This document shows positions 9,189-24,221 of a DNA stretch of 64,000 bases, in pieces; the first letter of the stretch is position 1, and each line of letters starts with the position of its first letter. Below the pieces are notes generated by a model. That model was not told the origin of the DNA and made no database searches. It worked only from the letters and a program-made list of their open reading frames with translations. A program made the position numbers and the translations under genes. The stretch lies in IMG/VR virus record IMGVR_UViG_3300043399_000272, positions 1 to 64,000 of that record, one strand, 5' to 3'.

Positions 9189-10625
9189 TTAGACCTTTTC
9201 AGGCAAATCGTAGCGATCCTTCATAACGGTCTTCAACATGACAGCTTCGGGTGTGAAGTCTTCCAAGTCGTTAGCCATTACAGAAGTAGCCAGCGCAGGG
9301 CTGAAGCCAGAAACAAGAGCGGTACCACTCTTATCGAACTTGACAGGGGTGTTGCCATAGGCAGCGTTCAAGTTCCAGAAAACTACACGAGGTAGTTCGT
9401 AGCCAGCTTCCTTGTACTTGCGTTCCATCATCTTGATGGCAGATTCATCCTTACCGTCAACAGCTCCGTCGAACTGCATGTCGGAGAAGATTACAAGAGT
9501 ACCAGGCATTTCTGCTTGTGGGACCTTGTTCTGAACCGCAGTCTTAAGGATCAAATCAAACGCCGCGTTCAAGTTAGTGTTAGCCACTTCGCCAGTGTTC
9601 ATTTGGTCAATCTTTTGATTGATGTTACCCTTAAGGTTGACTAGCTTCGGAGTACGGCTGAATGTTAGGAAACAGTCAGCAAACTTACCCTTGTTCTTGT
9701 CAGCAAAGTACAAGCCCAGAGATAGTGCAACATCCAAGCAGGACAAGCCAGACTTGGAGTTGTAACCACCTGCGGCGCAAGTCATAGAGCCGCTAGAGTC
9801 TACCATAGGTAGAACATCTGCATCACCGATGTAGTTAGGTAGTGCATCCCATTGTGCTTGTAGCGCATCAAGTTCTGTCTTAGACATGGACTTGCGGCTC
9901 CAGCTGTTGATAGCACCCTTCAATACATCGTAAGGGTATACTGCACCGGCGTTGATTTTAACGCCAGCTTCACCCTTCACCAACTTAGTTACGTATTCAG
10001 CGTAAGTTGTGCCGTGACGGCCAAACGCCTTCTTGTAACGTGCATGTGCCACAGAGGGAACATGGTTATAGTTGATGTTGTCCCAGTCGTTGGCACACAT
10101 TTGTGTTTCAACAACATTAGTCAAAGCAACAAGGCTCTTGCGATATTGCTTAGGAGTCATACCGAAGAATTCACGGATTTCACGTGCTACTTCGCCCTTA
10201 CGTGGAGTCCACTTTGCCGCCAAGCCGTTACGTGCGCGGAGCGCATCACCAAGCATAGTATATGCCTTGGCCTTTAGAGGCTTGGTCTTAAACACAAGTA
10301 GGTCATCGTAACGACCCAATTCAGGGACCTTTGCCATCAGACGCATAGCATCTTCTGGATTAGTCTTTTCCAGATACTGCAAGATATCACGGAAAAGTTG
10401 ACGTTCACCGGAACCACCACGAGCATCACGTGCCCATTGTGCGATACGGAGAGCCAGATCGGAGTTTTCTACGTAAGCCGCAGTGAAAGCAGGAACGATG
10501 TTCTTGCCACGGCTTGCACCGATGTTATAGAACAAGTCAACACATGCGTTAGCACTGGACTTGCGAGCCTTCATACCATTTGTGGTACGAGTAGATTGGT
10601 TCTTGATTGCTTCTGCGAATTGCAT
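9189..10625 (-). CDS. DUF2828-family helical + vWA protein (Ro60/TROVE-like)
   Basis: RDARGGSGER, GRYDDL, LAAKWTPR, MIDAS-type VDSSGSM, IFSDMQFD, VFWNL, LVSGFSP; AGGAG SD. Confidence 0.85.
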   Translation of the reverse strand: MQFAEAIKNQSTRTTNGMKARKSSANACVDLFYNIGASRGKNIVPAFTAAYVENSDLALRIAQWARDARGGSGERQLFRDILQYLEKTNPEDAMRLMAKVPELGRYDDLLVFKTKPLKAKAYTMLGDALRARNGLAAKWTPRKGEVAREIREFFGMTPKQYRKSLVALTNVVETQMCANDWDNINYNHVPSVAHARYKKAFGRHGTTYAEYVTKLVKGEAGVKINAGAVYPYDVLKGAINSWSRKSMSKTELDALQAQWDALPNYIGDADVLPMVDSSGSMTCAAGGYNSKSGLSCLDVALSLGLYFADKNKGKFADCFLTFSRTPKLVNLKGNINQKIDQMNTGEVANTNLNAAFDLILKTAVQNKVPQAEMPGTLVIFSDMQFDGAVDGKDESAIKMMERKYKEAGYELPRVVFWNLNAAYGNTPVKFDKSGTALVSGFSPALATSVMANDLEDFTPEAVMLKTVMKDRYDLPEKV

Positions 10626-10652
10626 AGTACTCTCCTTTCTATGATTTTATGC

Positions 10653-10712
10653 AACAGGATGCGCTTTTAGTTTCATTTACAGTGAAATTTTAAAGTTGCT
10701 GAATGCATCCTA
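10653..10712 (-). ncRNA. CAGCA-handle RNA 1 (5' leader of the DUF2828 gene; Tyr-type anticodon hairpin)
   Basis: UAGGAUGC-AUUCAGCAA...UUUCA-CUGUAAA-UGAAA...GCAUCCUG. Confidence 0.7.
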
Positions 10713-10719
10713 AAAAAGA

Positions 10720-10748
10720 ATTATACTACAGTTTTGTTTATTTGTCAA
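10720..10748 (-). promoter_or_regulatory. sigma70-type promoter
   Basis: Perfect TTGACA-17-TATAAT; predicted +1 at ~10713, the 5' end of handle RNA 1. Confidence 0.85.
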
Positions 10749-10764
10749 CTGTAGTATAGATACG

Positions 10765-10931
10765 ACAGGATCGTTGTTGGCTGCTTTTAGTATACTCAGG
10801 CCACCACTCTGAGTTTGCTAGTCTTGCTTCAATAAGCACCTTCAAGGCTAGGCAGTTTTACGTGCTTCGCTCCAGTAACTTACCACAGTGTCTAGCGGAT
10901 CATATAAATGATAATTGCTGTACCGATCCTA
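10765..10931 (-). ncRNA. CAGCA-handle RNA 2 (multi-hairpin module)
   Basis: UAGGAUCG-GUACAGCAA...CGAUCCUG. Confidence 0.65.
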
Positions 10932-10941
10932 AAAAATAAAA

Positions 10942-11169
10942 ACGGGATGTTCGGAGACGTAATTTTATTTTCTGGTTCTGCTCTGGTTACTCCCAGAACC
11001 CTAGCAACGATTCACGTTGCCTAGCTAGTGTTGTGTCTGTACTAGCATCATAGAATGTCTTTCCAATCTGTCATCAGTTCCGTTAGCGTCTAGTTTCCTA
11101 GATAAACCCTTTGGGGGCACCGTCTACTGCATTAGTTCAGTATGTTTTTAAATGCTGTAATCATCCCTA
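10942..11169 (-). ncRNA. CAGCA-handle RNA 3 (~230-nt multi-hairpin module)
   Basis: UAGGGAUG-AUUACAGCA...CAUCCCG. Confidence 0.65.
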
Positions 11170-11188
11170 CAAATCATTTAATAAACGT

Positions 11189-11216
11189 ATTATACATAAT
11201 TTTGGTTATCTGTCAA
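11189..11216 (-). promoter_or_regulatory. sigma70-type promoter for handle RNAs 3 and 2
   Basis: TTGACA-16-TATAAT. Confidence 0.7.
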
Positions 11217-11237
11217 ACAATTTCGGATAAATACTCT

Positions 11238-11846
11238 ATGAACTTATACGAAGAATTAGAGTTACCCAAAAACTGTTCTCCTGAACAAATTAAACAACAA
11301 TACCGTCATATGGCAGGTATTCATCATCCTGACAAAGGCGGAGATGCTGAAAAGTTCAAAAGAATAAAACTCGCCTATGAAGTATTAAGTGACCCTTCCC
11401 GTAGAAAAACATACGATGAGACCAATGTTATCAGCGAGAGTAATGGCATACGCAATGAAGCGTTAAACACACTATCTCTGGTATTCTTTAAAGTAATTTC
11501 TTCTATCGATTTACATAATGGTAACTTAGTAGAAGCGATGAAAACTGAAATAGCAGGTGGTAACGCCAAACTAGATGCTGATGCTGCCAACTGTAAAAAA
11601 TATATTTTAAATCTCGAATTAGCTAAACAAAAATTAATATTCAAAAATCCAGTAGATGAAAATATATTACTAGGATTTTTAGAAACTCAACTTAGCGCCA
11701 GACAGAATGATTTGCGTGTTATTGCACATCAAAGAGAAGTAAATGATTTAATGTTGATATTATTAGAAGACTATATGTATGGGTTCTTAGAACTACCCAC
11801 ACATATACCTGATGTAGTCAATGACGAGGGTAATCCTAATCCTTGA
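11238..11846 (+). CDS. J-domain (DnaJ-like) protein
   Basis: LYEELEL...HHPDKGGD...AYEVLSD; ATG just after TAAATA. Confidence 0.85.
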   Translation: MNLYEELELPKNCSPEQIKQQYRHMAGIHHPDKGGDAEKFKRIKLAYEVLSDPSRRKTYDETNVISESNGIRNEALNTLSLVFFKVISSIDLHNGNLVEAMKTEIAGGNAKLDADAANCKKYILNLELAKQKLIFKNPVDENILLGFLETQLSARQNDLRVIAHQREVNDLMLILLEDYMYGFLELPTHIPDVVNDEGNPNP

Positions 11847-11862
11847 CTGTTTATTAACTGAT

Positions 11863-11938
11863 TGGTGGAGGTGACAGGACTCGAACCCGCTACCTTCTGA
11901 ATGCAAATCAGACGCTCTCCCAGCTGAGCTACACCCCC
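11863..11938 (-). tRNA. tRNA-Ala(TGC)
   Basis: Canonical cloverleaf, G3:U70, CCA. Confidence 0.95.
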
Positions 11939-11947
11939 ACTAGTGTT

Positions 11948-12154
11948 TTATTTATACCGAATACGTTTGAGGTAATCTTTACCTACAAGCCCTTCTTCAA
12001 TTTCCGTAAGTGCAGTAACTACTGGACCATGCTTAATATCTAATTTTGGTCTATGACCATTTCGTAATTCACGAACTCGCTGACTTGCAACGAGAATCAA
12101 ATCATACCTATTTCCAATTTGTTCTACTGCTTTTTCGCTACTAATTCTTGCCAT
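11948..12154 (-). CDS. rpoZ: RNA polymerase omega subunit homolog
   Basis: MARISSEKAVEQIGNRYDLILVASQRVREL...TALTEIEEG. Confidence 0.85.
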   Translation of the reverse strand: MARISSEKAVEQIGNRYDLILVASQRVRELRNGHRPKLDIKHGPVVTALTEIEEGLVGKDYLKRIRYK

Positions 12155-12158
12155 ATAT

Positions 12159-12482
12159 TCACCAATAATAAATGTGTGGTTTGCGACCGACACCGGGATA
12201 ATCTTCATCAATAAGTTCCTCAATAGGACACTTAACAATTTTCTTTTCCCACTGCTTGCCACGAGCACGTTGAGGCTGATTCATAAATTCACGGATGAAC
12301 CAACTAGGTTCAGTCATCCAATGATTTTCAGTGTCAACATGCTTCTTTTTCTTTGTCAGTACACCGCGATATTCAAGGAAGCAAAAGCGATATGGCCAAG
12401 CTCCACAGCGGTAATACCTGTAATCCCATTGTTGTTCAGGAAACCTGATTTTAGTGGGACGGTCTTTATACGTTCTAGACAT
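12159..12482 (-). CDS. basic hypothetical protein (MSRTYKD...)
   Basis: AAGGAG SD. Confidence 0.7.
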   Translation of the reverse strand: MSRTYKDRPTKIRFPEQQWDYRYYRCGAWPYRFCFLEYRGVLTKKKKHVDTENHWMTEPSWFIREFMNQPQRARGKQWEKKIVKCPIEELIDEDYPGVGRKPHIYYW

Positions 12483-12537
12483 GTTTTTCTCCTTAACATC
12501 TAAAATCGCATATTAACCTCTACTTTCTTTTTAAATT

Positions 12538-12613
12538 TGGAGCGGGCAAAGAGACTCGAACTCTCGACATTCACCTTGGCAAGGTGACGCTCTACCAACT
12601 GAGCTATACCCGC
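12538..12613 (-). tRNA. tRNA-Gly(GCC)
   Basis: Canonical, U73, CCA. Confidence 0.95.
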
Positions 12614-12614
12614 A

Positions 12615-12764
12615 TTAACTTGGTATCATATGAGGCATAAAGGGAACTGCTCTGGGTCCATGACGTTGTTGTAAAAGCATTCGTGCTTCTTCTGCACTGT
12701 TTGCACCAACACGGTCTTTGAACTCTTTACCGTTTACTCTAATTGTTGCCTCAAATAATTTCAT
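12615..12764 (-). CDS. small hypothetical protein (MKLFEATIR...)
   Basis: Lies between two tRNAs. Confidence 0.6.
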   Translation of the reverse strand: MKLFEATIRVNGKEFKDRVGANSAEEARMLLQQRHGPRAVPFMPHMIPS

Positions 12765-12770
12765 ATTCTT

Positions 12771-12846
12771 TGGTGGATCGTGACAGGCTCGAACTGCCGA
12801 CATTCTGCGTGTAAGGCAGACACTCTACCAACTGAGTTAACGATCC
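12771..12846 (-). tRNA. tRNA-Val(TAC)
   Basis: Canonical cloverleaf. Confidence 0.95.
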
Positions 12847-12856
12847 TATATCTTAT

Positions 12857-13036
12857 TTAGCCGCCTTGCTCACTATCTTTAATTTCTGTTTGCTGAGCAA
12901 TACGTTCAAATTCTTCGTCCTCTTGAAGTTGTTCTTCTTCAAGGCGTTTGTCTTTACGGAAGATTCTGTCAAAGTTATTAGCGAATTCTTCCTGACTTAC
13001 ACTAAATGGTCTTGGACTAGAACCTTTGCCGCTCAT
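12857..13036 (-). CDS. small hypothetical protein (MSGKGSSPRPFSV...)
   Basis: Read by hand, 59 aa; ATGA overlap. Confidence 0.7.
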   Translation of the reverse strand: MSGKGSSPRPFSVSQEEFANNFDRIFRKDKRLEEEQLQEDEEFERIAQQTEIKDSEQGG

Positions 13037-13203
13037 TTTTCATTATCCTTAACTTTGACAAAACTGCGTGATTCACCTTGTGCAATTTCAACGAAACTAC
13101 GAATGAATGCCCCGCGGGCGTGTGCATCACGAATAGTAGCGGCACGGCGCTTAATTGCTTTTGAAATCTTCACTGCCTTCGGGCTATATCCTCTACAAGT
13201 CAT
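13033..13203 (-). CDS. small basic hypothetical protein (MTCRGYSPKAVK...)
   Basis: Read by hand; AAGGAG SD. Confidence 0.7.
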   Translation of the reverse strand: MTCRGYSPKAVKISKAIKRRAATIRDAHARGAFIRSFVEIAQGESRSFVKVKDNEK

Positions 13204-13223
13204 AATTACTCCTTTAGTTTAAG

Positions 13224-13299
13224 TGGTCTCGGTAGAGGGATTTGAACCCCCACCACATGCTCCCAAAGCATGGACGCTACCAGGTTACGCCATACCGAG
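13224..13299 (-). tRNA. tRNA-Pro(TGG)
   Basis: Cloverleaf, loop TTTGGGA. Confidence 0.9.
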
Positions 13300-13866
13300 T
13301 TTAAATCTATTTACATAGTCATCAACTATGTGTTGAATTTCTCCTGCGTATCTGCTATGTAGATACTGATGATGTGTGGGACATAATGGAACTAGATTTT
13401 CAGGTCTATCATCAAAATGATCCTCATTATAATGATGGACTGCTACAATCTTATTTTCACCACATACTACACACTCTTTTTTATGATTCGCAAAACATTT
13501 ATATTGATACGAATCACCTTTAAAATTACCATTGTTCTCGCCAACTTTGAAAAAGCTATTAGCGCAACTTTTGCTACAAGTTCCCTTTGAAGTCTTGTAA
13601 TTTTTTATAGGTTTTCCGCAAAAATTACATTCTTTCAGATTAGCAGGATTCATGTAGCAATGATGCTCATGTTTCTTTATATTAGCGATCCCGTATTCTT
13701 CTCCACAAAATCTACATTTTCTTTTCCTAGCGTTTATCTCACTGAACCCGCCTGTACCAGGATTAGATAAATGTGCGATGAATGCTTTCAAAGACTTGTA
13801 GTTTTTGTTGTTCTTAGGACTAGTAAAAGTTCCGTCAGTGTTTTGATATTGTATGTATTGTTGCAT
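13285..13866 (-). CDS. HNH endonuclease with Zn-finger repeats
   Basis: CxxC repeats; VHH...NLVPLCPTHH. Confidence 0.8.
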   Translation of the reverse strand: MQQYIQYQNTDGTFTSPKNNKNYKSLKAFIAHLSNPGTGGFSEINARKRKCRFCGEEYGIANIKKHEHHCYMNPANLKECNFCGKPIKNYKTSKGTCSKSCANSFFKVGENNGNFKGDSYQYKCFANHKKECVVCGENKIVAVHHYNEDHFDDRPENLVPLCPTHHQYLHSRYAGEIQHIVDDYVNRFKLGMA

Positions 13867-13924
13867 ACACTTATTTATGCTCGGAGTGCTAAATTTGAGA
13901 TTTTATGCACTCTGACCAAAGATT

Positions 13925-13993
13925 TGGTTGCGGGTAAGGATTCGAACCTCTGGGCCGAGCTTATGAGACTGACCTATCACCTGATTTCCCGCG
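13925..13993 (-). tRNA. degenerate tRNA-fMet-like (CAT)
   Basis: CGCGGG/CCCGCA-ACCA with C1:A72, loop CTCATAA, reduced D arm. Confidence 0.55.
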
Positions 13994-14013
13994 TAGATAT
14001 TTAACTGAATTAT

Positions 14014-14135
14014 AACAGGTTCTCTTTTTTCGTGCTACCATTACACTACAGTGACGACCAATTCACTGCCGGGATTCGAACTCGGACCTTCTTTTTTCCA
14101 GAAAGATAAAATTTAAATTGCTGAAAAGAACCTAA
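14014..14135 (-). ncRNA. CAGCA-handle RNA 4: circularly permuted tRNA (Ser GGA-type arm), YrlA-like
   Basis: Handle, anticodon arm, T arm (UUCGAAU), closed acceptor CAGUGA/UCACUG, D arm, handle. Confidence 0.75.
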
Positions 14136-14147
14136 TGGTCAAATGTG

Positions 14148-14224
14148 TGGTGCCCTCAGCGGGACTTGAACCCGCAGAATCCTGATTTTGAGTCAGGCAC
14201 GTATACCAATTCCATCACAAGGGC
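14148..14224 (-). tRNA. tRNA-Leu(CAA), short variable loop
   Basis: 77-nt cloverleaf. Confidence 0.85.
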
Positions 14225-14225
14225 G

Positions 14226-14399
14226 TTACTTACTCCTGCGATATTCGATCTTCATTTGTTCAGAAATGTTGAAAGAATTCAACAACCCTGCATCTTTGTC
14301 CGCTTTAATTTGCGGCCAAAATTGATTAGGGTCGTATTTCTCGCCAGAGACTGTTACGGTTTTGTATAGTTTGTCGTTGATGTAAATTTTGATTTCCAT
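14226..14399 (-). CDS. small hypothetical protein (MEIKIYINDK...)
   Basis: Read by hand; TAAATA 5 nt upstream. Confidence 0.6.
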   Translation of the reverse strand: MEIKIYINDKLYKTVTVSGEKYDPNQFWPQIKADKDAGLLNSFNISEQMKIEYRRSK

Positions 14400-14417
14400 A
14401 ACAGTATTTATGATATT

Positions 14418-14494
14418 TGGTGCCCCAGAGGAGACTCGAACTCCTAAAATTTGGCTTCTAAGACCAACACGTATACCAATTCCGTCACCGGGGC
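14418..14494 (-). tRNA. tRNA-Leu(TAG), short variable loop
   Basis: 77-nt cloverleaf. Confidence 0.85.
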
Positions 14495-14606
14495 AATTAA
14501 TTTTTAAAGAACAAAGTAAAGTATATCAAATAAAATTTACTTTGTCAAATGTTTTGGTTAACTGTTTCTCATCCTATACATTGTAAACAATGAGAAACAC
14601 TTTTAT

Positions 14607-14680: not shown

Positions 14681-14693
14681 GATAAATATATTT

Positions 14694-18679: not shown

Positions 18680-19240
18680 CTATGAAAGCAAGATTCTGCT
18701 ATGCTTAGGAACACCTGATAGCAGGTATTCCATTTGGTCAGCACGGATCGTGCGGTTTTGTAGAATCATGTTTTCATAGTGGTTAGGTTCATAAGGAACA
18801 TATAGCAATTCAAGGCCAGCTTCTTTTAGAGTCTTATGACCCTTCTTGCTGTTACATTCTTTACATGCAGTAACCACGTTCATCCAAGTGTTTTCGCCAC
18901 CACGTGCCCGAGGGATAATATGGTCACGACTTAGATTTGTATGGTTAACAAAGTGCCCGCCGCAATATGCACAAACATGTCGGTCACGACCGAACAATGT
19001 TCGGTTGCTTAATGCAACATGACTATGCTTATAAGGGTTGAATCCATGACCCTTGATAGCGATGATACTAGGTGTTTCTAGGTACGACATTGTGCCGTCG
19101 TTTTGAATACCTCCGCGGTACTGTGCGACAACATCACCCATACTCCATGCTACTGAGTTAGTAGCCCAGTATGAAATTGCGTCATCAGTGGAGATCCACT
19201 GCCGGGGAACTCCTGAAATGTCAAGTGCTAGAACAGCCAT
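18680..19240 (-). CDS. HNH endonuclease (McrA-like)
   Basis: RDRHVCAYCG...DHIIPRARGG...NVVTACKECNSKK; AGGAG SD. Confidence 0.9.
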   Translation of the reverse strand: MAVLALDISGVPRQWISTDDAISYWATNSVAWSMGDVVAQYRGGIQNDGTMSYLETPSIIAIKGHGFNPYKHSHVALSNRTLFGRDRHVCAYCGGHFVNHTNLSRDHIIPRARGGENTWMNVVTACKECNSKKGHKTLKEAGLELLYVPYEPNHYENMILQNRTIRADQMEYLLSGVPKHSRILLS

Positions 19241-19286
19241 GCTATACTCCTTCTCTGTTACTGTCTACATGTATTTAGATCCTGTT

Positions 19287-19363
19287 TGGAGGGACATGAG
19301 GGATTTGAACCCCCGACCTTTGGTTTCGAAGACCAAGACTCTTCCGAACTGAGTTAATGTCCC
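19287..19363 (-). tRNA. tRNA-Arg(TCG)
   Basis: Loop CTTCGAA. Confidence 0.9.
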
Positions 19364-19404
19364 ATATATTAATTATACAACAAATACCATTATTTGTCAA
19401 AAAC

Positions 19405-19487
19405 TGGTACCCCCTCTCGGGCTCGAACCGAGAAATTACACTCCTCTGTTTGAGAGAGGCGACTTTACCAAATTTGTCCAAGGGGGC
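19405..19487 (-). tRNA. tRNA-Leu(CAA), second copy
   Basis: Loop CTCAAAC, intermediate V arm. Confidence 0.8.
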
Positions 19488-19490
19488 ATT

Positions 19491-19566
19491 TGGTGCCAAA
19501 GACTGGGATCGAACCAGTGACACACGGATTTTCAATCCGCTGCTCTACCATCTGAGCTACATTGGC
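19491..19566 (-). tRNA. tRNA-Phe(GAA)
   Basis: Canonical cloverleaf. Confidence 0.95.
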
Positions 19567-19567
19567 G

Positions 19568-19741
19568 TTACTTGGGTTCAGGAATCTTCTTTAGTGATTC
19601 TTTTCTTACAAGACAATCACGTTGCGTTCCTAAACGAAAAACTCTCAAGTATTCGACACCATCGATCATCTGAATATCTTTGGTGTCTTTGCAATAAAAT
19701 TTCTCCCTATTACGGAGATTCTCAAAGTAAATAGTTTTCAT
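19568..19741 (-). CDS. small hypothetical protein (MKTIYFENLRN...)
   Basis: Read by hand; AAGGAG SD. Confidence 0.65.
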   Translation of the reverse strand: MKTIYFENLRNREKFYCKDTKDIQMIDGVEYLRVFRLGTQRDCLVRKESLKKIPEPK

Positions 19742-19755
19742 TTTAGTCTCCTTAT

Positions 19756-19830
19756 TGGTATCTCTGCCCAGAGTTGAACTGAGATTTATTCTTTAGGAGA
19801 GAATTGTTCTATCCATTGAACTACAGAGAT
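19756..19830 (-). tRNA. tRNA-Arg(CCT)
   Basis: Loop CTCCTAA. Confidence 0.85.
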
Positions 19831-19833
19831 ATG

Positions 19834-20208
19834 TTATCTTGTTACTTTTGCTCTGGCTGCTACCATGTCTTCAAACGAACCTTTTTCCATCACGTTCGTG
19901 TATGTGTCAGTCAGGCCACTAGCATGGTCTACTACTCTGTTATCACATTCATGGTACGTTCTGATTCTCTCAGTGCCTGCTTGGTATCTTTCAGTGTCCT
20001 CATGAAAATGAGCCTGAACTCTACTCAGACAAGTAATGTATGCTTGACGTTTGTTATCTTCACGACTACGACTATTCGTGCCGTTCGCAGTTATTCCAGT
20101 TGGCTCATGTATACAGCGGCAACAGTTTTGATGTTTGTTGCGATGCTGGCCACCTTTGCCAGTTCCAGAAAACCATTCATATCTAAATTGATCCTCAGTG
20201 ACTTTCAT
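19834..20208 (-). CDS. stand-alone GGQ peptidyl-tRNA hydrolase (RF-1 domain; ArfB/PrfH-like)
   Basis: SGTGKGGQHRNK, HEPTGI, SRSREDNK, ERIRTY...RVVDH. Confidence 0.85.
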   Translation of the reverse strand: MKVTEDQFRYEWFSGTGKGGQHRNKHQNCCRCIHEPTGITANGTNSRSREDNKRQAYITCLSRVQAHFHEDTERYQAGTERIRTYHECDNRVVDHASGLTDTYTNVMEKGSFEDMVAARAKVTR

Positions 20209-20233
20209 ATTGTTCTCCACTGATATTTATAAT

Positions 20234-20324
20234 TGGCAGTGAGTGAGAGATTCGAACTCTCGTGCCGTGTAATACGACCATCATCTTTCCAGGATGCGCC
20301 CTTAAGCCTCTCAGGCAACTCACT
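20234..20324 (-). tRNA. tRNA-Ser(GGA)
   Basis: Long V arm, G73. Confidence 0.9.
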
Positions 20325-20329
20325 ATGTT

Positions 20330-20405
20330 TGGTGTCCAGTACTGGGATCGAACCAGTGACCTCTACCGTGTCAAGGTAGCGTTCATACCGCTGAACTAAC
20401 CGGAC
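20330..20405 (-). tRNA. tRNA-Val(GAC)
   Basis: Canonical cloverleaf. Confidence 0.95.
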
Positions 20406-20470
20406 ATATAAACTACTAAAGTACATGATTCTACTACTTTGAAAGTACTAAGTACTTCAAAGGAAATATC

Positions 20471-20740
20471 ATGAACGATCAACATCTATTACGCACATAC
20501 CTTAACATCATCAATGAGGCAGTTGGTGCCATCAACGAGAAGTGGGGCAAGTCTACTGTAGTTAGCCCAGAAGAAAAAGGCAAATATGCTGGCAAATCTA
20601 AAGCTGAATTACTTAAACAATATAATGCTCTTAAAGCAAGCGGCCCTCATAAGAAAGGTTCTCCCGAGTACGGAAGAATGCGTGAATTAGCATTTGCTAT
20701 TCGTGCAAAAAGTAATTGGGGTAAAGTTAAAGATGAATAA
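20471..20740 (+). CDS. hypothetical protein
   Basis: AAGGA SD; N-terminal LRTYLNIINE motif. Confidence 0.75.
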   Translation: MNDQHLLRTYLNIINEAVGAINEKWGKSTVVSPEEKGKYAGKSKAELLKQYNALKASGPHKKGSPEYGRMRELAFAIRAKSNWGKVKDE

Positions 20741-20948
20741 TGTCATGCGTAACTTTATCAACATACTTAATGAGACACATATATCATATGGTCACAAAAT
20801 AGATAAATCTTCTGCTAACTACACTGACCACGGGGTCGGCGGCGAAGTATGTCACAATTGTAGACATTTCCGTGCACCACATAGATGTGAAATAGTTGAC
20901 GGATACATCGAACCTGGTGGTTGGTGTAGATACTTTGAAGAAGAATAA
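20733..20948 (+). CDS. HiPIP-like iron-sulfur protein
   Basis: Y...CHNCRHF...C...V.G.I...GWC..F pattern; overlapping start. Confidence 0.65.
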   Translation: MNNVMRNFINILNETHISYGHKIDKSSANYTDHGVGGEVCHNCRHFRAPHRCEIVDGYIEPGGWCRYFEEE

Positions 20949-21066
20949 AACGGGATACTTTTCTTGACGAATGCTCTACCTAATGAGCTAATCTGGCATG
21001 AAGCCAAATGTTGGAATCGAACCAACTACCTATCGTTTGATAGAATTTTGCTGTATGTATCCCTAA
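20949..21066 (-). ncRNA. CAGCA-handle RNA 5: circularly permuted tRNA, YrlA-like
   Basis: GGGAUAC-AUACAGCAA, T arm, acceptor closed by a UUCAU loop, D arm, GUAUCCC. Confidence 0.8.
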
Positions 21067-21068
21067 AC

Positions 21069-21146
21069 TGGTCTGGGTAGCAGGATTTGAACCTGCAGCC
21101 TCGAAGTTCCAAGCCTCGCCGTCTACCAAGTTGACAATATACCCAG
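21069..21146 (-). tRNA. tRNA-Pro(TGG), second copy, atypical
   Basis: Loop CTTGGAA (A37). Confidence 0.8.
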
Positions 21147-21153
21147 ATATTTT

Positions 21154-21519
21154 TTACAAACTAGAAATTGTTTTTCTTTTATATTTTCTAGCGTATTCTA
21201 TGCTACCCTTCATTGCGGCAGCACAACAAAATTTGTGATCTTTCCTAAAGATCCATTCATTCAACTTGAATGATTTCAATACTCTATCACCATTCCACCA
21301 TCCACGTTGAGTTTCAATGTAACCTTCTTGTTCAAGTTGGTCTCTCAATTTAGTGAATTCGTCATGGTCTTTATTACTGACACTAACTGCCTTGTCATAA
21401 CCCTTAAGAATTTTGATAAGGTCTTCATGTGTAGGATTGGTGCGGTCTTTAATAAAATCATGTTCAATCCTCACAGACACATCGGTAATGTATTGCTCGT
21501 CAATGACAAATTGTTTCAT
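21154..21519 (-). CDS. hypothetical protein
   Basis: AAGGA SD. Confidence 0.7.
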   Translation of the reverse strand: MKQFVIDEQYITDVSVRIEHDFIKDRTNPTHEDLIKILKGYDKAVSVSNKDHDEFTKLRDQLEQEGYIETQRGWWNGDRVLKSFKLNEWIFRKDHKFCCAAAMKGSIEYARKYKRKTISSL

Positions 21520-21685
21520 AACATTTCCTTATAGATTGGGAGCCTAGCTATCTGTCGTTACACAGCCTCACTAGATTGTCTCGTATACAAGAGTTTATAC
21601 TACCTTACTAATCTACTGATGTGTCACATACCAGCACAGTATGCTAGATTAGAAGGGACTCAATCGTACCGTCTATCCCATAAAT

Positions 21686-21760
21686 TGGTGCTCCTTGAAG
21701 GAATCGAACCTCCACCCCTGGATTACAAAACCAGTCCACTACCATTATGATTAAAAGAGC
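21686..21760 (-). tRNA. tRNA-Thr(TGT), second copy, atypical
   Basis: Loop TTTGTAA. Confidence 0.8.
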
Positions 21761-21765
21761 AATAT

Positions 21766-21888
21766 TGGTGCCGCCGCTAGGATTCGAACCTAGATAACCC
21801 CCTCGACATGGTTAAAGAAAATATGCTGAACGTACTCTAAAACAGAGTCACCCTTTTATAAGGCGTCCTACCGTTAGACGACAGCGGC
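21766..21888 (-). ncRNA. CAGCA-handle RNA 6: tRNA body with the handle in place of the anticodon loop
   Basis: GCCGCUG/CGGCGGC-ACCA, D and T arms; insert ACUCUG-UUU-UAGAGU-ACGUUCAGCAU. Confidence 0.75.
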
Positions 21889-21896
21889 ATTAAATT

Positions 21897-21972
21897 TGGT
21901 GCAGCCAGTGGACTCGAACCACTGCGGGAATCTAGAATGCGGGGGACATGCCCCCTACCCCTCCATTACTGC
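21897..21972 (-). ncRNA. tRNA-like RNA with acceptor and T arm only
   Basis: UUCGAGU T loop and ACCA end; no D arm; GGGGG-CAUGU-CCCCC hairpin. Confidence 0.55.
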
Positions 21973-21977
21973 AAAAC

Positions 21978-22052
21978 TGGCGCCGTAGAAGGGAATCGAA
22001 CCCTCATAGGACGGATAGACAATCCGTTGCATTACCAGTCTACCACTACGGC
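21978..22052 (-). tRNA. tRNA-Asp(GTC), second copy, atypical
   Basis: Loop TTGTCTA (U37), G73. Confidence 0.8.
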
Positions 22053-22062
22053 ATTAATTGAA

Positions 22063-22128
22063 TTTAGGGTGACAGTGCGTTAGTGGCCGATACTGTCATT
22101 CACCACTCGCTTCTACGCATACCCTAAA
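22063..22128 (-). ncRNA. putative compact pseudoknot RNA
   Basis: Four complementary segment pairs in 66 nt. Confidence 0.45.
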
Positions 22129-22132
22129 ATAT

Positions 22133-22207
22133 TGGCTCCGGTGGCTGGGATCGAACCAACGACCAATTGATTAACAGTCAACTGCACTACCGCTGTGCTA
22201 CACCGGA
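22133..22207 (-). tRNA. tRNA-Asn(GTT), second copy
   Basis: Cloverleaf. Confidence 0.9.
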
Positions 22208-22208
22208 A

Positions 22209-22595
22209 TTAAATTTTACAGAAAATACCTTTGAGAATTTTACTTGCCGGTTCAAAGTGTTCTTCCATGATATGATTTGCCATACCATATGCTGTTGTTC
22301 CCATGTCTATGTAATATCTAGGACTGGGCCAACGATTTTGTTTGAACGGATAACTATGAATAAGCAAGCATTCATCACCGACTTTTAACAAGTCTTTCTG
22401 TTTACCAGTACTTATTGCAGTAAGCATTTCAATTGCAACTGCATTGTTACCGATATCAGTTCTTTGAAAGTTATTTGCCATCAAGTGAACCACATAGGCT
22501 TCTACCTCGTGTTCTAGTATGATGCCATTAACACCTTCACTCTCTACTACTAGGTCGTAGCATGATTTAACATAATCAAACCAGTGCTTGCTCAT
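22209..22595 (-). CDS. hypothetical protein
   Basis: VGDECL motif; TAAATA upstream. Confidence 0.75.
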   Translation of the reverse strand: MSKHWFDYVKSCYDLVVESEGVNGIILEHEVEAYVVHLMANNFQRTDIGNNAVAIEMLTAISTGKQKDLLKVGDECLLIHSYPFKQNRWPSPRYYIDMGTTAYGMANHIMEEHFEPASKILKGIFCKI

Positions 22596-22609
22596 AGTAG
22601 TATTTATTC

Positions 22610-22686
22610 TGGTGCCGCCACATGGATTTGAACCATGGACCCCCGCCTTATCAAGACGGTGCTCTAACCAACTGAGCTATGGAGGC
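22610..22686 (-). tRNA. tRNA-Ile(GAT)
   Basis: Cloverleaf. Confidence 0.9.
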
Positions 22687-22691
22687 ATTAC

Positions 22692-22765
22692 TGGTTCCTC
22701 CACCAGGTTACGATCCTGGGTCTCACGATTATCAGTCGTGGGCTCTTCCATTGAGCTATAGAGGA
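22692..22765 (-). tRNA. tRNA-Ile(GAT), second copy, atypical T loop
   Basis: T loop ATCGTAA. Confidence 0.8.
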
Positions 22766-22766
22766 A

Positions 22767-23111
22767 TTAACTTACATAACCCCAGCGATTATTCTTCTGG
22801 GATTTAATTCTTGTTTCATCAAATTCAATTAAGCGAGTTAAGTTAACTGTGCCTGCATGAATCTTTCTATGACAATGCGAACACAACATTACACACTTCT
22901 TAGCCTCTGCCATAAGATTCTCCCATGACATAATTTTGCTAGACAGTGAGAATTCCTTGTGTTCACTGTTCAAATGATGAAAGTCGTAAACGATTGGATC
23001 ATCCTGTAAATCACAGACCGAACATCTATTATCAAACCCTTCTACAAGTTTAACCTTAGTGTTCTTTCTCCACTCTTTTACTTTTTCGTATCTTCTTTCT
23101 TTCGGTGTCAT
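22767..23111 (-). CDS. HNH endonuclease
   Basis: CSVC...DFHH...KCVMLCSHCHRKIH. Confidence 0.85.
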   Translation of the reverse strand: MTPKERRYEKVKEWRKNTKVKLVEGFDNRCSVCDLQDDPIVYDFHHLNSEHKEFSLSSKIMSWENLMAEAKKCVMLCSHCHRKIHAGTVNLTRLIEFDETRIKSQKNNRWGYVS

Positions 23112-23178
23112 AATATTTCCTCAGTTATCTTGTATTTATAACTGATTCACAAAAAATGACACCGGGTATAAACTTCTT

Positions 23179-23256
23179 TGGGGTGGATAGTCGGGATCGA
23201 ACCGACGCAATACCGGAATCACAACCCGGGGCCTTAACCACTTGGCTATACCCACC
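23179..23256 (-). tRNA. tRNA-His(GTG)
   Basis: C73 and encoded G-1. Confidence 0.9.
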
Positions 23257-23267
23257 ACAAAGAAGTC

Positions 23268-23342
23268 TGGTGGAAGTAGTAAGATTCGAACTTACGATAG
23301 GCACCGTATGAAGATGCTGCATTACCACTTTGCTATACTTCC
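23268..23342 (-). tRNA. tRNA-Met(CAT)
   Basis: Loop TTCATAC. Confidence 0.85.
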
Positions 23343-23351
23343 ATTATGAAT

Positions 23352-23423
23352 CAATTTGAAATACACTATTTTTCACCCCATCAGTAGAGTGACCCATCAG
23401 TAGGCGTAGTGTATTTCAAATTG
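23352..23423 (-). repeat. long-stem element L5 (17-bp perfect inverted repeat, internal 12-nt direct repeat)
   Basis: CAATTTGAAATACACTA...TAGTGTATTTCAAATTG; ACCCATCAGTAG x2 inside. Confidence 0.7.
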
Positions 23424-23495
23424 GTGCGGGGTAAGGGAGTCGAACCCTTGACTAAACGTTGGCAACGTTTGATTTTACCGTTAAACTAACCACGC
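23422..23495 (-). tRNA. tRNA-Gly(GCC), second copy, A73
   Basis: Cloverleaf with an atypical discriminator. Confidence 0.8.
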
Positions 23496-23587
23496 ATTAA
23501 ACTGGGCCCTTGAGGTCACCGTCGAAAGTGACATTACCAACTATTAACGGGTTGCGCGCCAGCCGCGTCAAACTCAAGGATAAAACT

Positions 23588-23663
23588 TGGTACCTGAGAC
23601 TGGACTCGAACCAGTATCGCTCACTGTGTAAAAGTGACGTATGACCTCTCTACGCACTCAGGT
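23588..23663 (-). tRNA. tRNA-Val(TAC), second copy
   Basis: Loop TTTACAC. Confidence 0.8.
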
Positions 23664-23670
23664 ATAATCT

Positions 23671-23748
23671 TGGAACACCGGGTCAGATTCGAACTGACGG
23701 TTTTGCGGATTTGCAATCCACTGCATTGGGCCTCTCTGCCACCGGTGC
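23671..23748 (-). tRNA. tRNA-Cys(GCA), second copy
   Basis: U73. Confidence 0.85.
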
Positions 23749-23755
23749 ATAAATT

Positions 23756-23831
23756 TGGTGCTGATACCGAGAGTCGAACTCGGGACCTCATCATTACCAA
23801 TGATGTATTCTACCAACTGAACTATATCAGC
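23756..23831 (-). tRNA. tRNA-Thr(GGT)
   Basis: Canonical cloverleaf. Confidence 0.95.
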
Positions 23832-23833
23832 AT

Positions 23834-23899
23834 AACAGGATCGTTTTTTACGGTTTAGATTAGAAGTCTAATGTATTTTGATTGCTGAACCGATCCTAA
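23834..23899 (-). ncRNA. CAGCA-handle RNA 7 (Arg UCU-type anticodon hairpin)
   Basis: UAGGAUCG-GUUCAGCAA...UUAGA-CUUCUAA-UCUAA...CGAUCCUG. Confidence 0.75.
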
Positions 23900-23903
23900 A
23901 ACT

Positions 23904-23980
23904 TGGCGCGTCTGGCAGGATTCGAACCCACGACCCCTTGGTTCGTAGCCAAGTACTCTATCCAACTGAGCTACAGACGC
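23904..23980 (-). tRNA. tRNA-Arg(ACG)
   Basis: Canonical cloverleaf. Confidence 0.95.
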
Positions 23981-24075
23981 ATAAATTCGTGCCGCTTCTT
24001 GGGACTTGTACCCCAGTTACTCCATTCCCTTGTCGCGGCTCCGAGGGCGAGTCTGTTTTCTTCTAGCTAGAATTC

Positions 24076-24151
24076 TGGCACCCCCTGATGGACTCGAACC
24101 ACCGAATGTCGGAATCAAAATCCGATGCCTTACCAACTTGGCGAAGGAGGT
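24076..24151 (-). tRNA. tRNA-Gln(TTG)
   Basis: Loop TTTTGAT, G73. Confidence 0.9.
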
Positions 24152-24158
24152 ATAATAT

Positions 24159-24221
24159 AACAGGATGCTGGTTTGCTTTTTTCCAAATAAAAAGTTTTTT
24201 AATTTGCTGGAAGCATCCTAA
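24159..24221 (-). ncRNA. CAGCA-handle RNA 8
   Basis: UAGGAUGC-UUCCAGCAA...CUUUUU-AUUUGGA-AAAAAG...GCAUCCUG. Confidence 0.7.

What the first reader, a model, noticed from the sequence alone, without database searches (positions are those of the whole stretch)
9189..24221. Family of eight modular CAGCA-handle RNAs with a Ro60-like DUF2828 protein (Y-RNA-like system)
Seen: eight minus-strand elements at 10653-10712, 10765-10931, 10942-11169, 14014-14135, 20949-21066, 21766-21888, 23834-23899 and 24159-24221. They share a helix starting UAGG or UAGA with compensatory changes (GGAUGC/GCAUCC, GGAUCG/CGAUCC, GGUUCU/AGAACC, GGGAUAC/GUAUCCC, GAGU/ACUC). The helix is followed by an unpaired NNNCAGCA(A/U) with an A-rich strand opposite, while the interiors differ. 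Three copies lie in tandem directly upstream of the DUF2828/vWA gene; several others sit flush between tRNAs, so tRNA processing would release them. Established: bacterial Ro60 (Rsr) binds a conserved stem of Y RNAs, and YrlA RNAs carry a permuted tRNA-like module; as I recall it, their motif is GNCGA-type rather than CAGCA. Inference: DUF2828 is a Ro60-like ring protein that binds this different handle and is tethered to varied RNA effector or decoy modules in translation-targeted conflict.
Basis: partly seen in the sequence, partly recalled or inferred. Interest (0 to 1): 0.9.

Follow-up and report, generated by a model that had tools for sequence, protein, structure and literature searches.

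The report
Ro60-like protein with tRNA-mimic small RNAs
A giant phage, and many gut and freshwater bacteria and phages, encode a Ro60-shaped protein next to an unannotated family of small RNAs that share one closing "handle" and carry copies of tRNA parts. It looks like a second Y-RNA-type system for tRNA damage or repair, and its handle also matches an orphan RNA class of social amoebae.

Summary
A covariance model of the handle finds exactly seven in 64 kb; the eighth is a tRNA-shaped, circularly permuted form. The handle is a 6-9 bp terminal helix, single-stranded U-N-A-CAGCA(A/U), an A-rich return strand and a 3' UGUU tail.

Linkage to DUF2828 holds widely. 72 of 76 close relatives have a copy about 30 nt upstream of the start codon. 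In 80 distant loci (34-62% identity), 85 of 86 hits lie on the gene strand, and 77 lie in the 1 kb upstream.

The protein model (pLDDT 92) matches only Ro60/TROVE structures over its full length. In Clostridia the gene sits with RtcB, RlaP and WYL regulators, like rsr-yrlA-rtcB.

One new point: the variable interiors are tRNA parts, namely exact anticodon loops (Lys, Arg, Tyr, Thr), T-arms or whole permuted tRNAs.

No Rfam family reaches threshold. The nearest are YrlA and, unexpectedly, Dictyostelium Class I RNA.

Protein-RNA binding and function remain inferred. I rate this a new variant of the Ro60/Y-RNA kind.

The parts
9189..10625 (-). Gene for a 478-aa DUF2828 + DUF7788 protein: a Ro60-like helical domain followed by a vWA domain with a MIDAS site
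   Evidence: Pfam PF11443 (1.3e-26) and PF25043 (4.5e-42). PHROG 850 'RNA-binding protein'. AF2 model pLDDT 92.2. The top six PDB fold matches are all Ro60/TROVE. D276, S278, S280, T350 and D382 are invariant.
10720..10748 (-). Sigma-70 consensus promoter (TTGACA-17-TATAAT) driving E1 and the DUF2828 mRNA
   Evidence: 12 of 12 consensus match. The -10 hexamer ends 7-8 nt before the UAGG of E1.
10651..10716 (-). E1: a short handle RNA in the 5' leader of the gene. Its interior hairpin UUUCA-CUGUAAA-UGAAA carries the tRNA-Tyr anticodon loop
   Evidence: R2 65.3 bits. Fold. The loop is identical to that of the phage tRNA-Tyr. Orthologues end a median of 30 nt upstream of the ATG in 72 of 76 related loci. 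RF01414 scores 25.0 bits.
10762..10935 (-). E2: a handle RNA of about 170 nt with a conserved structured interior of unknown identity
   Evidence: R2 38.3 bits. In the alignment of 12 orthologues, 16 of 34 predicted pairs show compensatory changes.
10939..11172 (-). E3: a handle RNA of about 230 nt (GGGAUG/CAUCCC helix, CAGCAU) with a large structured interior
   Evidence: R2 18.2 bits, E 0.041. Fold z-score -3.1 with the closing helix formed.
11189..11216 (-). Sigma-70 consensus promoter (TTGACA-16-TATAAT) driving E3 and E2
   Evidence: 12 of 12 consensus match.
14012..14138 (-). E4: handle plus a circularly permuted whole-tRNA mimic (anticodon-like hairpin with loop CUGGAAA, T-arm, closed acceptor stem, D-arm)
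   Evidence: R2 34.1 bits. Sequence read. Anticodon-type hairpin found. Orthologues keep the T-loop UUCGAAU. RF01414 scores 21.7 bits.
20947..21068 (-). E5: handle plus a YrlA-like tRNA module (hairpin, T-arm, 7-bp closed acceptor stem, D-arm)
   Evidence: R2 39.8 bits. The minimum-energy fold shows exactly these arms, z-score -5.2. YrlA RF02553 gives a partial hit of 26.5 bits on 20973-21030.
21766..21888 (-). E6: a tRNA-framed variant with acceptor stem, D-arm, T-arm and CCA. Between the D-arm and the T-arm lies a loop-closed handle followed by ACGUU-CAGCAU
   Evidence: Rfam tRNA 40.4 bits, but not called by ARAGORN. Sequence and fold. The same architecture occurs in L064, L121 and Citrobacter phage Ci1, where it is annotated 'tRNA-Pseudo'.
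23832..23902 (-). E7: a short handle RNA between tRNA-Arg and tRNA-Thr. Its interior hairpin UUAGA-CUUCUAA-UCUAA carries the tRNA-Arg(UCU) anticodon loop
   Evidence: R2 63.2 bits. Loop identity. Flanks.
24157..24224 (-). E8: a short handle RNA between tRNA-Ala and tRNA-Gln
   Evidence: R2 64.0 bits. The best match to Rfam Dicty_Class_I_RNA: 32.5 bits, full model length.
8642..24649 (-). Array of 46 tRNA genes in which the gene and the handle RNAs are embedded (context)
   Evidence: ARAGORN and Rfam.
6115..8696 (-). Same-strand genes downstream that resemble RNA end-healing enzymes: a DSP/PTP-like phosphatase (8130-8696), an AAA_33 P-loop kinase (7453-7917) and a metallophosphoesterase (6115-6738). 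Context only; it is not shown that they belong to the system
   Evidence: Pfam hits. The phosphatase and Metallophos_2 hits fall below the curated cut-offs. AAA_33 scores 77 bits.

Best explanation
The 478-aa DUF2828/DUF7788 protein is a divergent Ro60: a TROVE-like helical domain plus a vWA/MIDAS domain. The eight RNAs are its Y-RNA counterparts.

Handle. Each RNA is closed by the same handle: a terminal helix of 6-9 bp formed by the two ends, then single-stranded U-N-A-CAGCA(A/U) on the 5' side, an A-rich stretch on the 3' side, and a UGUU tail. I infer that the protein recognises this handle, as Ro60 recognises the conserved stem of Y RNAs.

Cargo. The handle carries interchangeable tRNA-mimic modules:
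- bare anticodon stem-loops whose 7-nt loops equal real tRNA loops (Tyr in E1, Arg-UCU in E7; Lys, Thr and Ser in relatives);
- T-arm, acceptor and D-arm modules like those of YrlA (E5);
- whole circularly permuted tRNAs (E4);
- a tRNA frame with the handle inserted (E6);
- larger modules of unknown kind (E2, E3).

Production. The RNAs are made from strong promoters just upstream of the gene, or are released from the tRNA array by tRNA end-processing.

Function (inferred from context). The particle acts on damaged tRNA. In bacteria it sits in RtcB/RlaP repair operons behind WYL regulators. In phages it sits in tRNA arrays beside kinase, phosphatase or RNA-ligase genes. The tRNA-like modules could present substrate look-alikes to anticodon nucleases (decoy), or they could recruit tRNA-handling and repair enzymes to the Ro-like protein (scaffold).

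Shown: the RNA family, its covariation, its linkage to the gene, the protein fold, the operon syntax and the tRNA-loop identities. Inferred: binding, processing, and the choice between decoy and scaffold.
For: RNA family.
- Motif count 10 against 0.96 expected.
- The model finds 7 hits and nothing else in the window.
- Helix covariation: 7 of 8 pairs, 96.6% paired.
- 196 copies on the gene strand against 1 on the other, in 79 related loci.

Linkage.
- 72 of 76 close loci have a copy 0-120 nt upstream of the ATG.
- In 80 loci at 34-62% protein identity, 85 of 86 hits are on the gene strand. 77 of them fall in the 1 kb upstream, which is 5% of the sequence searched. 47 of 77 testable loci are positive.
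- Cultured phages RSP15 and BUCT-ZZ01 are positive.

Protein.
- The six full-length fold matches are all Ro60/TROVE.
- The top sequence-profile hits to PDB are TROVE/Ro60.
- vWA_Ro60 is hit by 10 of 72 members.
- Independent HHpred note in the Ochrobactrum phage record.

Context.
- RtcB in 24 loci, a WYL + WCX regulator pair in 28, RlaP in 6.
- RNA ligase beside the gene in phage GAP32.

Modules.
- 59 of 196 unique RNAs have a 5-bp/7-nt hairpin with a tRNA-type loop, against 5.5 expected. 17 are T-loops. The rest are mostly CUUUUAA, CUUCUAA, CUGUAAA and CUUGUAA, identical to the loops of tRNA-Lys, Arg, Tyr and Thr.
- These include the tRNAs cut by PARIS AriB (Lys, Thr, Asn; PMC12409363) and by retron-Eco7 PtuAB and PrrC (Tyr, Lys; PMC11555353).

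Analogy. YrlA RNAs lie within 4 kb of Ro60 genes on the same strand and carry T, D and acceptor-like arms (PMC4201824).
Against: - No experiment or structure shows the protein touching the RNA.
- Pfam TROVE is never hit by sequence. TM-scores to Ro60 are moderate (0.40-0.62). I did not check that a closed ring with a central hole is kept.
- 30 of 77 distant loci, and phages GAP32, OC and Ci1, show no linear handle near the gene.
- E1 lies in the mRNA leader with no terminator after it, so it could act in cis.
- The model-fitted alignments and the many closely related loci inflate the counts.
- The hairpin statistic uses simple shuffles of sequences that are not independent.
- Anticodon mimicry fits a decoy, a scaffold or a sensor equally well.
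Confidence: 0.7

Rival explanations
1. The handle elements are cis-acting leaders. The copy in the 5' UTR is bound by the protein or by a metabolite to autoregulate DUF2828 translation. The other copies are by-products or decoys of that loop rather than functional trans-acting RNAs.
For: E1 starts at the predicted transcription start and runs into the ribosome-binding site with no terminator between. 72 of 76 close loci keep a copy a median of 30 nt before the ATG.
Against: Five of the eight copies lie 3-14 kb from the gene, flush between tRNAs. Tandem arrays of 2-4 copies with different interiors are the rule. E3 and E2 have their own consensus promoter. RSP15 has copies on both sides of the gene. 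Autoregulation by E1 is compatible with the main explanation and need not replace it.
Confidence: 0.12
2. The handle is recognised by another factor, such as RtcB, an RNA ligase, a tRNA-processing enzyme or a host chaperone. DUF2828 is merely co-regulated in the same repair operon.
For: RtcB is adjacent in 24 distant loci and RNA ligase in GAP32. The A-rich and U-rich single strands are typical chaperone sites (my own knowledge). The same handle occurs in Dictyostelium Class I RNAs, whose only proven direct binder is the RRM protein Rnp1A.
Against: DUF2828 is the only gene present in all 160 fetched loci by construction, and the RNA follows it where RtcB is absent, as in the window, L127 and BUCT-ZZ01. 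GAP32 has the ligase but no handle nearby. The protein's only structural relatives are proteins that bind RNAs of this type.
Confidence: 0.1
3. The elements are decayed or rearranged tRNA genes and spacer hairpins of the tRNA array (tRNA-array debris) with no function of their own.
For: They sit inside a 46-tRNA array. Several contain T-arms, D-arms and anticodon loops. One scores as tRNA.
Against: The non-tRNA part, the handle, is the most conserved part, and it covaries. The elements occur upstream of DUF2828 in bacterial chromosomal loci without tRNA arrays. Strand bias is 196:1 and 85:1.
Confidence: 0.03

Closest known systems
Bacterial Ro60 (Rsr) with YrlA/YrlB Y RNAs, as in the Salmonella rsr-yrlBA-rtcBA operon and in mycobacteriophages (PMC4201824; Rfam RF02553)
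   Same: The protein has a helical TROVE-type domain plus a vWA/MIDAS domain. The RNAs are encoded just upstream on the same strand, often several in tandem and processed from one transcript. The two RNA ends form the protein-binding stem. Some RNAs carry a module with T-arm, acceptor-like stem and D-arm (E4, E5; L099 scores 37.7 bits on YrlA). RtcB is adjacent.
   Different: The protein is not detectable as TROVE by sequence; it is Pfam DUF2828/DUF7788. The handle is a perfect helix plus single-stranded U-N-A-CAGCAA and a UGUU tail, not GNCGAAN0-1G or GGUCCGA. Many RNAs carry only an anticodon stem-loop, or a full permuted tRNA with its anticodon arm, which YrlA lacks. There are up to eight RNAs per genome, scattered in a tRNA array. 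The regulators are of WYL/WCX type rather than RtcR.
Class I RNAs of dictyostelid social amoebae (Rfam RF01414; PMC7919456)
   Same: About 60 nt long. [quoted passage not shown] An unpaired conserved motif, CCUUACAGCAA, lies right after the 5' strand, with the same near-invariant U, C, C, A and A positions. The interior is variable and A-rich. The 3' end is CUGU, with its C paired to the 5' G. The Rfam model aligns end to end with six phage elements at 21.7-32.5 bits.
   Different: They are eukaryotic genes with a DUSE promoter and were reported as unique to Dictyostelia. All phage scores are below the gathering score of 41.5. The known direct binder is the RRM protein Rnp1A. No link to a DUF2828 protein has been reported or could be tested here.
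Phage-encoded tRNAs that neutralise tRNA-cleaving defence systems (T5 tRNA-Lys/Thr/Asn against PARIS; T5 tRNA-Tyr against retron-Eco7; PMC11464382, PMC12409363, PMC11555353)
   Same: Phage-borne RNAs in a tRNA-rich region that display the anticodon loops of Lys(UUU), Thr(UGU) and Tyr(GUA), the very targets of those nucleases.
   Different: The handle RNAs are not tRNAs. Most lack an acceptor end and could not be charged, so they cannot replace a cut tRNA in translation. They could at most act as decoys, baits or recruiters.

Membership tests
Ro60/TROVE proteins (Pfam PF05731 + PF25045) | TROVE domain recognisable by sequence | tested here: not met
   No PF05731 hit for the window protein or for any of 72 homologues, even at E<=1. 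NCBIfam gives no hit.
Ro60/TROVE proteins (Pfam PF05731 + PF25045) | Fold: helical-repeat domain followed by a vWA domain, superposable on solved Ro60 structures | tested here: met
   The six best PDB matches are 9kop, 1yvp, 9l5y, 9nfa, 2nvo and 9nen, over 511-574 columns, E 1e-8 to 2e-6, TMq 0.40-0.62. The next hits are isolated vWA domains at E>3e-3. I did not inspect whether the ring is closed.
Ro60/TROVE proteins (Pfam PF05731 + PF25045) | vWA domain with a MIDAS motif, of Ro60 type | tested here: met
   DxSxS (D276, S278, S280), T350 and D382 are invariant in 72 sequences. PF25045 vWA_Ro60 is hit by 10 of 72 members (best E 5e-4). The profile's best PDB sequence hits are the Ro60 vWA regions.
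Ro60/TROVE proteins (Pfam PF05731 + PF25045) | Binds a cognate small RNA through a conserved terminal stem | not testable with these tools
   Only genomic linkage is shown.
YrlA Y RNA (Rfam RF02553) | Reaches the Rfam gathering score (69 bits) | tested here: not met
   Best scores are 26.5 bits in the window and 37.7 bits in L099.
YrlA Y RNA (Rfam RF02553) | GNCGAAN0-1G motif near the 5' end (the presumed Rsr site) | tested here: not met
   All elements have U-N-A-CAGCA(A/U) instead. The YrlA motif definition is from PMC4201824.
YrlA Y RNA (Rfam RF02553) | tRNA-like domain with T-arm, acceptor-like stem and D-arm | tested here: met
   Met for E4 and E5 and for many orthologues. Not met for E1, E7 and E8, which carry only an anticodon-type hairpin or none.
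YrlA Y RNA (Rfam RF02553) | Encoded within about 4 kb of the Ro60 gene on the same strand | tested here: met
   Met with respect to the DUF2828 gene.
Dictyostelium Class I RNA (Rfam RF01414) | Reaches the Rfam gathering score (41.5 bits) | tested here: not met
   Scores are 32.5, 30.6, 26.3, 25.0, 24.3 and 21.7 bits.
Dictyostelium Class I RNA (Rfam RF01414) | Short 5'/3' stem starting with G; adjacent unpaired 11-nt motif with conserved U3, C6, C9, A10, A11; 3' CUGU | tested here: met
   Shown by the end-to-end alignment and the consensus. The feature list is from PMC7919456. U3 is present in most copies but not all.
Dictyostelium Class I RNA (Rfam RF01414) | DUSE promoter about 60 nt upstream; a dictyostelid gene | tested here: not met
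   These are phage and bacterial loci with sigma-70 promoters or tRNA-array transcription.
tRNA (Rfam RF00005), for the element at 21766-21888 | Cloverleaf with an anticodon arm | tested here: not met
   It scores 40.4 bits (cut-off 29) through the acceptor, D and T arms. The anticodon arm is replaced by about 55 nt holding the closed handle and CAGCAU, and ARAGORN does not call it.

The most novel reading that the evidence does not exclude
The G-stem / U-N-A-CAGCAA / CUGU handle may mark one RNP class shared by bacteria, phages and eukaryotes. Under this reading, Dictyostelium Class I RNAs are the eukaryotic members of this family. They have been an abundant orphan RNA class since 2004 and are held to be unique to social amoebae. 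Their missing partner would be a DUF2828/DUF7788 Ro-like protein, possibly DDB_G0281243, the protein of unknown function recovered in the DdR-21 pull-down. By extension, the uncharacterised eukaryotic DUF2828 proteins, plant ones included, would be RNA-bound Ro-like particles.
Probability: 0.3. Interest if true: 0.9.

Novelty: new variant of a known kind. Interest (0 to 1): 0.8.

Why it matters
Ro60/Y-RNA particles are known from animals and from about 5% of bacteria, and what their tRNA-like Y RNAs are for is still unsettled.

This finding adds a second, sequence-unrelated-looking branch: a large protein family (6026 clusters at 50% identity) that is functionally uncharacterised in the literature I could search. 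It also adds an RNA family absent from Rfam.

The cargo is explicit. It consists of anticodon loops of the tRNAs that defence nucleases cut, and whole permuted tRNAs. That turns the open question of why Y RNAs mimic tRNA into a testable one: decoy, bait or repair scaffold.

Tractable systems exist: Ralstonia phage RSP15, Synechococcus elongatus phage BUCT-ZZ01, Citrobacter phage Ci1 and cultured gut Clostridia.

The finding would also annotate many unexplained gaps in phage tRNA arrays, as well as 'pseudo-tRNAs' such as the one in Ci1.

If the match to Dictyostelium Class I RNAs reflects a shared protein partner, it would give a mechanism to a 20-year-old orphan RNA class.

Tried and rejected
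- Single-sequence structure prediction gave an unusable model (pLDDT 40). It was replaced by the alignment-based model.
- My first generic stem+CAGCA scanners were too permissive. I used only the strict scanner and the covariance models.
- GAP32 (Rak2-like jumbo phage), Ochrobactrum phage OC and Citrobacter phage Ci1 show no linear handle within 4-6 kb of the gene. The RNA is therefore not universal there, or is too divergent to detect.
- Look-ups of two distant representatives returned only 2-4 kb contigs with no informative neighbours.
- I tried to learn whether Dictyostelium encodes a DUF2828 protein and what DDB_G0281243 is. Literature searches found nothing. The proteome files in the Kjellin supplement are truncated and lack it. 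Avesson 2011 is not held. The question stays open.
- Burroughs & Aravind 2016 (Rot/TROVE scaffolds in RNA repair) is not held. I could not check whether it already counts DUF2828 among TROVE-like proteins.
- I considered and rejected three other readings: repeat DNA or mobile-element ends, excluded by strand bias and RNA-type covariation including G-U pairs; transcription terminators, excluded because there is no T-run after a GC-rich hairpin and none was called; and riboswitches, excluded because the interiors are not conserved.

Full report
WHAT IS THERE

The window is the first 64 kb of a 260-kb viral contig, IMGVR_UViG_3300043399_000272. It carries 46 tRNA genes on the minus strand between 8642 and 24649. 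The ORF at 9189-10625 (-) encodes a 478-aa protein with Pfam DUF2828 (1.3e-26) and DUF7788 (4.5e-42).

I read all eight reported elements on the minus strand. Seven share this plan:
- U-rich leader;
- UAGG(N3-5), pairing with a 3' strand that ends CC(U)G;
- 2-4 unpaired bases;
- CAGCA(A/U);
- a variable interior;
- an A-rich stretch;
- the 3' strand of the helix;
- UGUU(A/U).

The eighth, at 21766-21888, has a tRNA acceptor stem, D-arm, T-arm and CCA. Its handle helix is closed by a loop (ACUC-UGUUUUA-GAGU) and followed by ACGUU-CAGCAU. It is the same parts in circularly permuted order. Rfam scores it as tRNA (40.4 bits), but ARAGORN does not call it.

IS IT MORE THAN CHANCE?

TAGGN{5,9}CAGCAW occurs 10 times against 0.96 expected, and no shuffle of 100 reached 10.

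In 79 related viral loci (76-98% protein identity), a strict scanner found 196 handles on the gene strand and 1 on the other. These comprise 140 distinct sequences.

An alignment of 32 short elements has an 8-bp closing helix that is 100% paired, with two perfectly covarying pairs. After adding distant relatives, 7 of 8 pairs show changes on both sides and 96.6% of cells are paired, against 32-51% for slid partners. That alignment is fitted to the model, which favours the structure.

The second model (R2) finds exactly seven hits in the window at E<=5, all at the reported places.

LINKAGE TO THE GENE

In the close clade, 72 of 76 loci with enough upstream DNA have a handle RNA ending 0-120 nt (median 30) before the start codon.

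A scan of one genome per species found 80 loci whose protein is only 34-62% identical. They come from Clostridia, Chloroflexota, Proteobacteria and other phyla, and many are probably phage or prophage DNA. In these loci R2 gave 86 hits at E<=1:
- 85 are on the gene strand;
- 77 lie in the 1 kb upstream of the gene, which is 5% of the strand-bases searched;
- four more lie just downstream;
- 47 of 77 testable loci are positive.

The helices there are entirely different (AAGACGG/CCGUCUU, AAGGCAC/GUGCCUU, GGCUACC/GGUAGCC), while U-N-A-CAGCAA and the G/UGUU tail persist. Tandem arrays of three to six elements precede the gene in L099 and L121.

Cultured phages also have the RNA. Ralstonia phage RSP15 has five hits of 25-53 bits in unannotated gaps of its tRNA array. 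Synechococcus phage BUCT-ZZ01 has two to three in tandem upstream of the gene.

GAP32, Ochrobactrum phage OC and 30 distant loci have no detectable copy nearby.

THE PROTEIN

Folded with 72 homologues, the model has pLDDT 92.2 and pTM 0.92.

Its six best PDB matches are all Ro60/TROVE proteins over the full length: Thermus phage Ro60, Xenopus Ro with RNA, human Ro60 and Deinococcus Rsr. E-values run from 1e-8 to 2e-6 and TMq reaches 0.62. Everything after them is an isolated vWA domain.

By sequence, only the vWA part is recognisably Ro60-like, and Pfam TROVE is never hit. The MIDAS residues are invariant, as are many arginines and lysines of the helical domain.

Annotators of one phage had already noted the Ro60 likeness by HHpred, and PHROGs calls the family 'RNA-binding protein'. 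The protein half of the idea is therefore not new. The family is large (6026 clusters at 50% identity), and I found no functional study of it in the searchable literature.

CONTEXT

In the distant cellular loci the recurring neighbours are RtcB (24 loci), a WYL protein plus a WCX-domain protein (28 loci; a PafBC-like pair) and RlaP (6 loci). A metallophosphoesterase gene was seen in the one locus I inspected, L127. This is the same syntax as rsr-yrlBA-rtcBA.

In GAP32 the neighbour is an RNA ligase.

In the window, the same-strand genes downstream look like a PTP/DSP phosphatase, an AAA_33 kinase and a metallophosphoesterase. The first and third are below Pfam cut-offs. Perfect sigma-70 promoters precede E3 and E1.

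Of 196 distinct handle RNAs, 59 contain a 5-bp stem with a 7-nt loop of tRNA type (Y-U-NNN-R-N), against 5.5 expected from shuffles.
- Seventeen are T-loops (UUCGAAU).
- Most of the rest are anticodon loops identical to those of real tRNAs in the same phage: CUUUUAA (Lys, 9), CUUCUAA (Arg-UCU, 9), CUGUAAA (Tyr, 7), CUUGUAA (Thr, 7), then Phe and Ser.

E1 carries the Tyr loop and E7 the Arg loop.

These loops recur in independent distant loci: L099 Ser, L103, L121 and L122 Lys, L093 and L106 Thr, L140 Tyr, L082 Arg.

The 100-125-nt forms hold an anticodon hairpin, T-arm, closed acceptor stem and D-arm in that order. That is a whole tRNA opened between the D and anticodon arms and joined there to the handle.

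The tRNA-framed form (E6) recurs in L064, in L121 and in Citrobacter phage Ci1, where it is annotated as a pseudo-tRNA.

E2 has a conserved structured interior (16 of 34 pairs compensatory) that I could not identify. E3 also folds well (z-score -3.1), and I could not identify its interior either.

HOW IT LIKELY WORKS

By analogy with Ro60 and Y RNA, the protein most likely binds the helix plus the ACAGCAA strand, and perhaps the UGUU tail. It would thereby carry tRNA look-alikes. This is inferred from linkage and fold, not shown.

Lys, Thr and Tyr, three of the four most frequent anticodon loops, belong to tRNAs cut by PARIS AriB, PrrC and retron-Eco7 PtuAB (PMC12409363, PMC11555353). From memory, Arg tRNAs are the colicin D targets.

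Together with the RtcB, RlaP, kinase and phosphatase neighbours, this points to a role in tRNA damage. The particle could act as a decoy or bait for anticodon nucleases, or as a scaffold that brings repair enzymes to tRNA-shaped substrates. I cannot separate these roles. E1 may in addition autoregulate the mRNA.

COMPARISON WITH KNOWN FAMILIES

No Rfam family reaches its gathering score on any element, in the window or in 12 other loci I scanned.

YrlA gives 23-38 bits (cut-off 69) on the tRNA-like modules only. Its defining 5' motif, GNCGAAN0-1G (PMC4201824), is absent.

The nearest family for the handle is unexpected: Dictyostelium Class I RNA (RF01414). Its model aligns end to end with six elements at 21.7-32.5 bits (cut-off 41.5). 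Dividing the reported E-value of the best hit by the 4227 families gives roughly 2e-6 for that single family in 16 kb.

The published definition of Class I RNAs reads like a description of this handle: a 5' G, a short terminal stem, unpaired CCUUACAGCAA with U3, C6, C9, A10 and A11 nearly invariant, a variable interior and a 3' CUGU (PMC7919456). That paper reports the class as unique to Dictyostelia.

One of the four proteins pulled down with Class I RNA DdR-21 is DDB_G0281243, of unknown function (preprint 10.1101/2020.04.05.026054). I could not obtain its sequence.

VERDICT

The system is best filed as a new variant of the Ro60/Y-RNA kind:
- a divergent Ro-like protein family;
- its own RNA family, not in Rfam;
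- explicit tRNA-part cargo;
- wide distribution in phage tRNA arrays and in Clostridial RtcB operons.

Binding and function need experiments.

Noticed in passing
window 15334-15433 (-): A 100-nt tRNA-like gene that ARAGORN reports with a four-base anticodon (ctcc) and no amino acid. Rfam tRNA scores 57.6 bits. An ORF (14861-15418, DUF2452-like) overlaps it. It may be a tRNA with an insertion or intron.
   Followed up: no
window 24394-24562 (-): Two further tRNA-like matches not called by ARAGORN: 24491-24562 (Rfam tRNA, 36.6 bits) and 24394-24478 (tRNA-Sec-like, 30.8 bits, below cut-off).
   Followed up: no
window about 21897-21935 (-): A T-arm followed by GCUGCACCA, just upstream of the tRNA-framed handle RNA. 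It looks like the 3' half of a tRNA that no tool called.
   Followed up: no
window 19834-20220 (-), 18680-19240 (-), 22767-23111 (-): Inside the tRNA array there is a 128-aa RF-1-domain protein (ArfB/peptidyl-tRNA-hydrolase-like) and two HNH endonuclease genes.
   Followed up: no
window 11238-11846 (+): A DnaJ-domain protein gene diverges from the E3 promoter. The listed ORF start at 11142 would overlap E3. The J domain begins at residue 34, so the ATG near 11238 is the likely start.
   Followed up: partly
window 26975-32856 (+): A cluster of four radical-SAM genes, two of them with SPASM domains, after a glycosyltransferase-like ORF. It suggests peptide or nucleoside modification.
   Followed up: no
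window 50200-53600 (- strand hits; ORF 50222-54409 +): A dense run of CAGCA-containing inverted matches turned up in my loose scanner. They lie antisense inside a 1395-aa ORF, which suggests a repeat-rich coding region unrelated to the handle RNAs.
   Followed up: no
L167 2484-2597 (Citrobacter phage Ci1, OR515478.1 77205-77318): The feature annotated 'tRNA-Pseudo-AAC' has a tRNA frame with a closed helix followed by UAUU-CAGCAU in place of the anticodon arm. This is the same architecture as window 21766-21888. It lies about 600 nt downstream of that phage's DUF2828 gene.
   Followed up: partly
L164 (Ralstonia phage RSP15, NC_030948.1) 2075-2275, 7763-8111, 8309-8380: Five handle RNAs lie in stretches of the RefSeq record that carry no annotation, between tRNA genes on both sides of gp240.
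   Followed up: partly
L127 7008-7141 (Anthropogastromicrobium aceti): A weak manganese-riboswitch match (29.5 bits, cut-off 45) lies upstream of an AI-2E transporter gene next to the DUF2828 locus.
   Followed up: no
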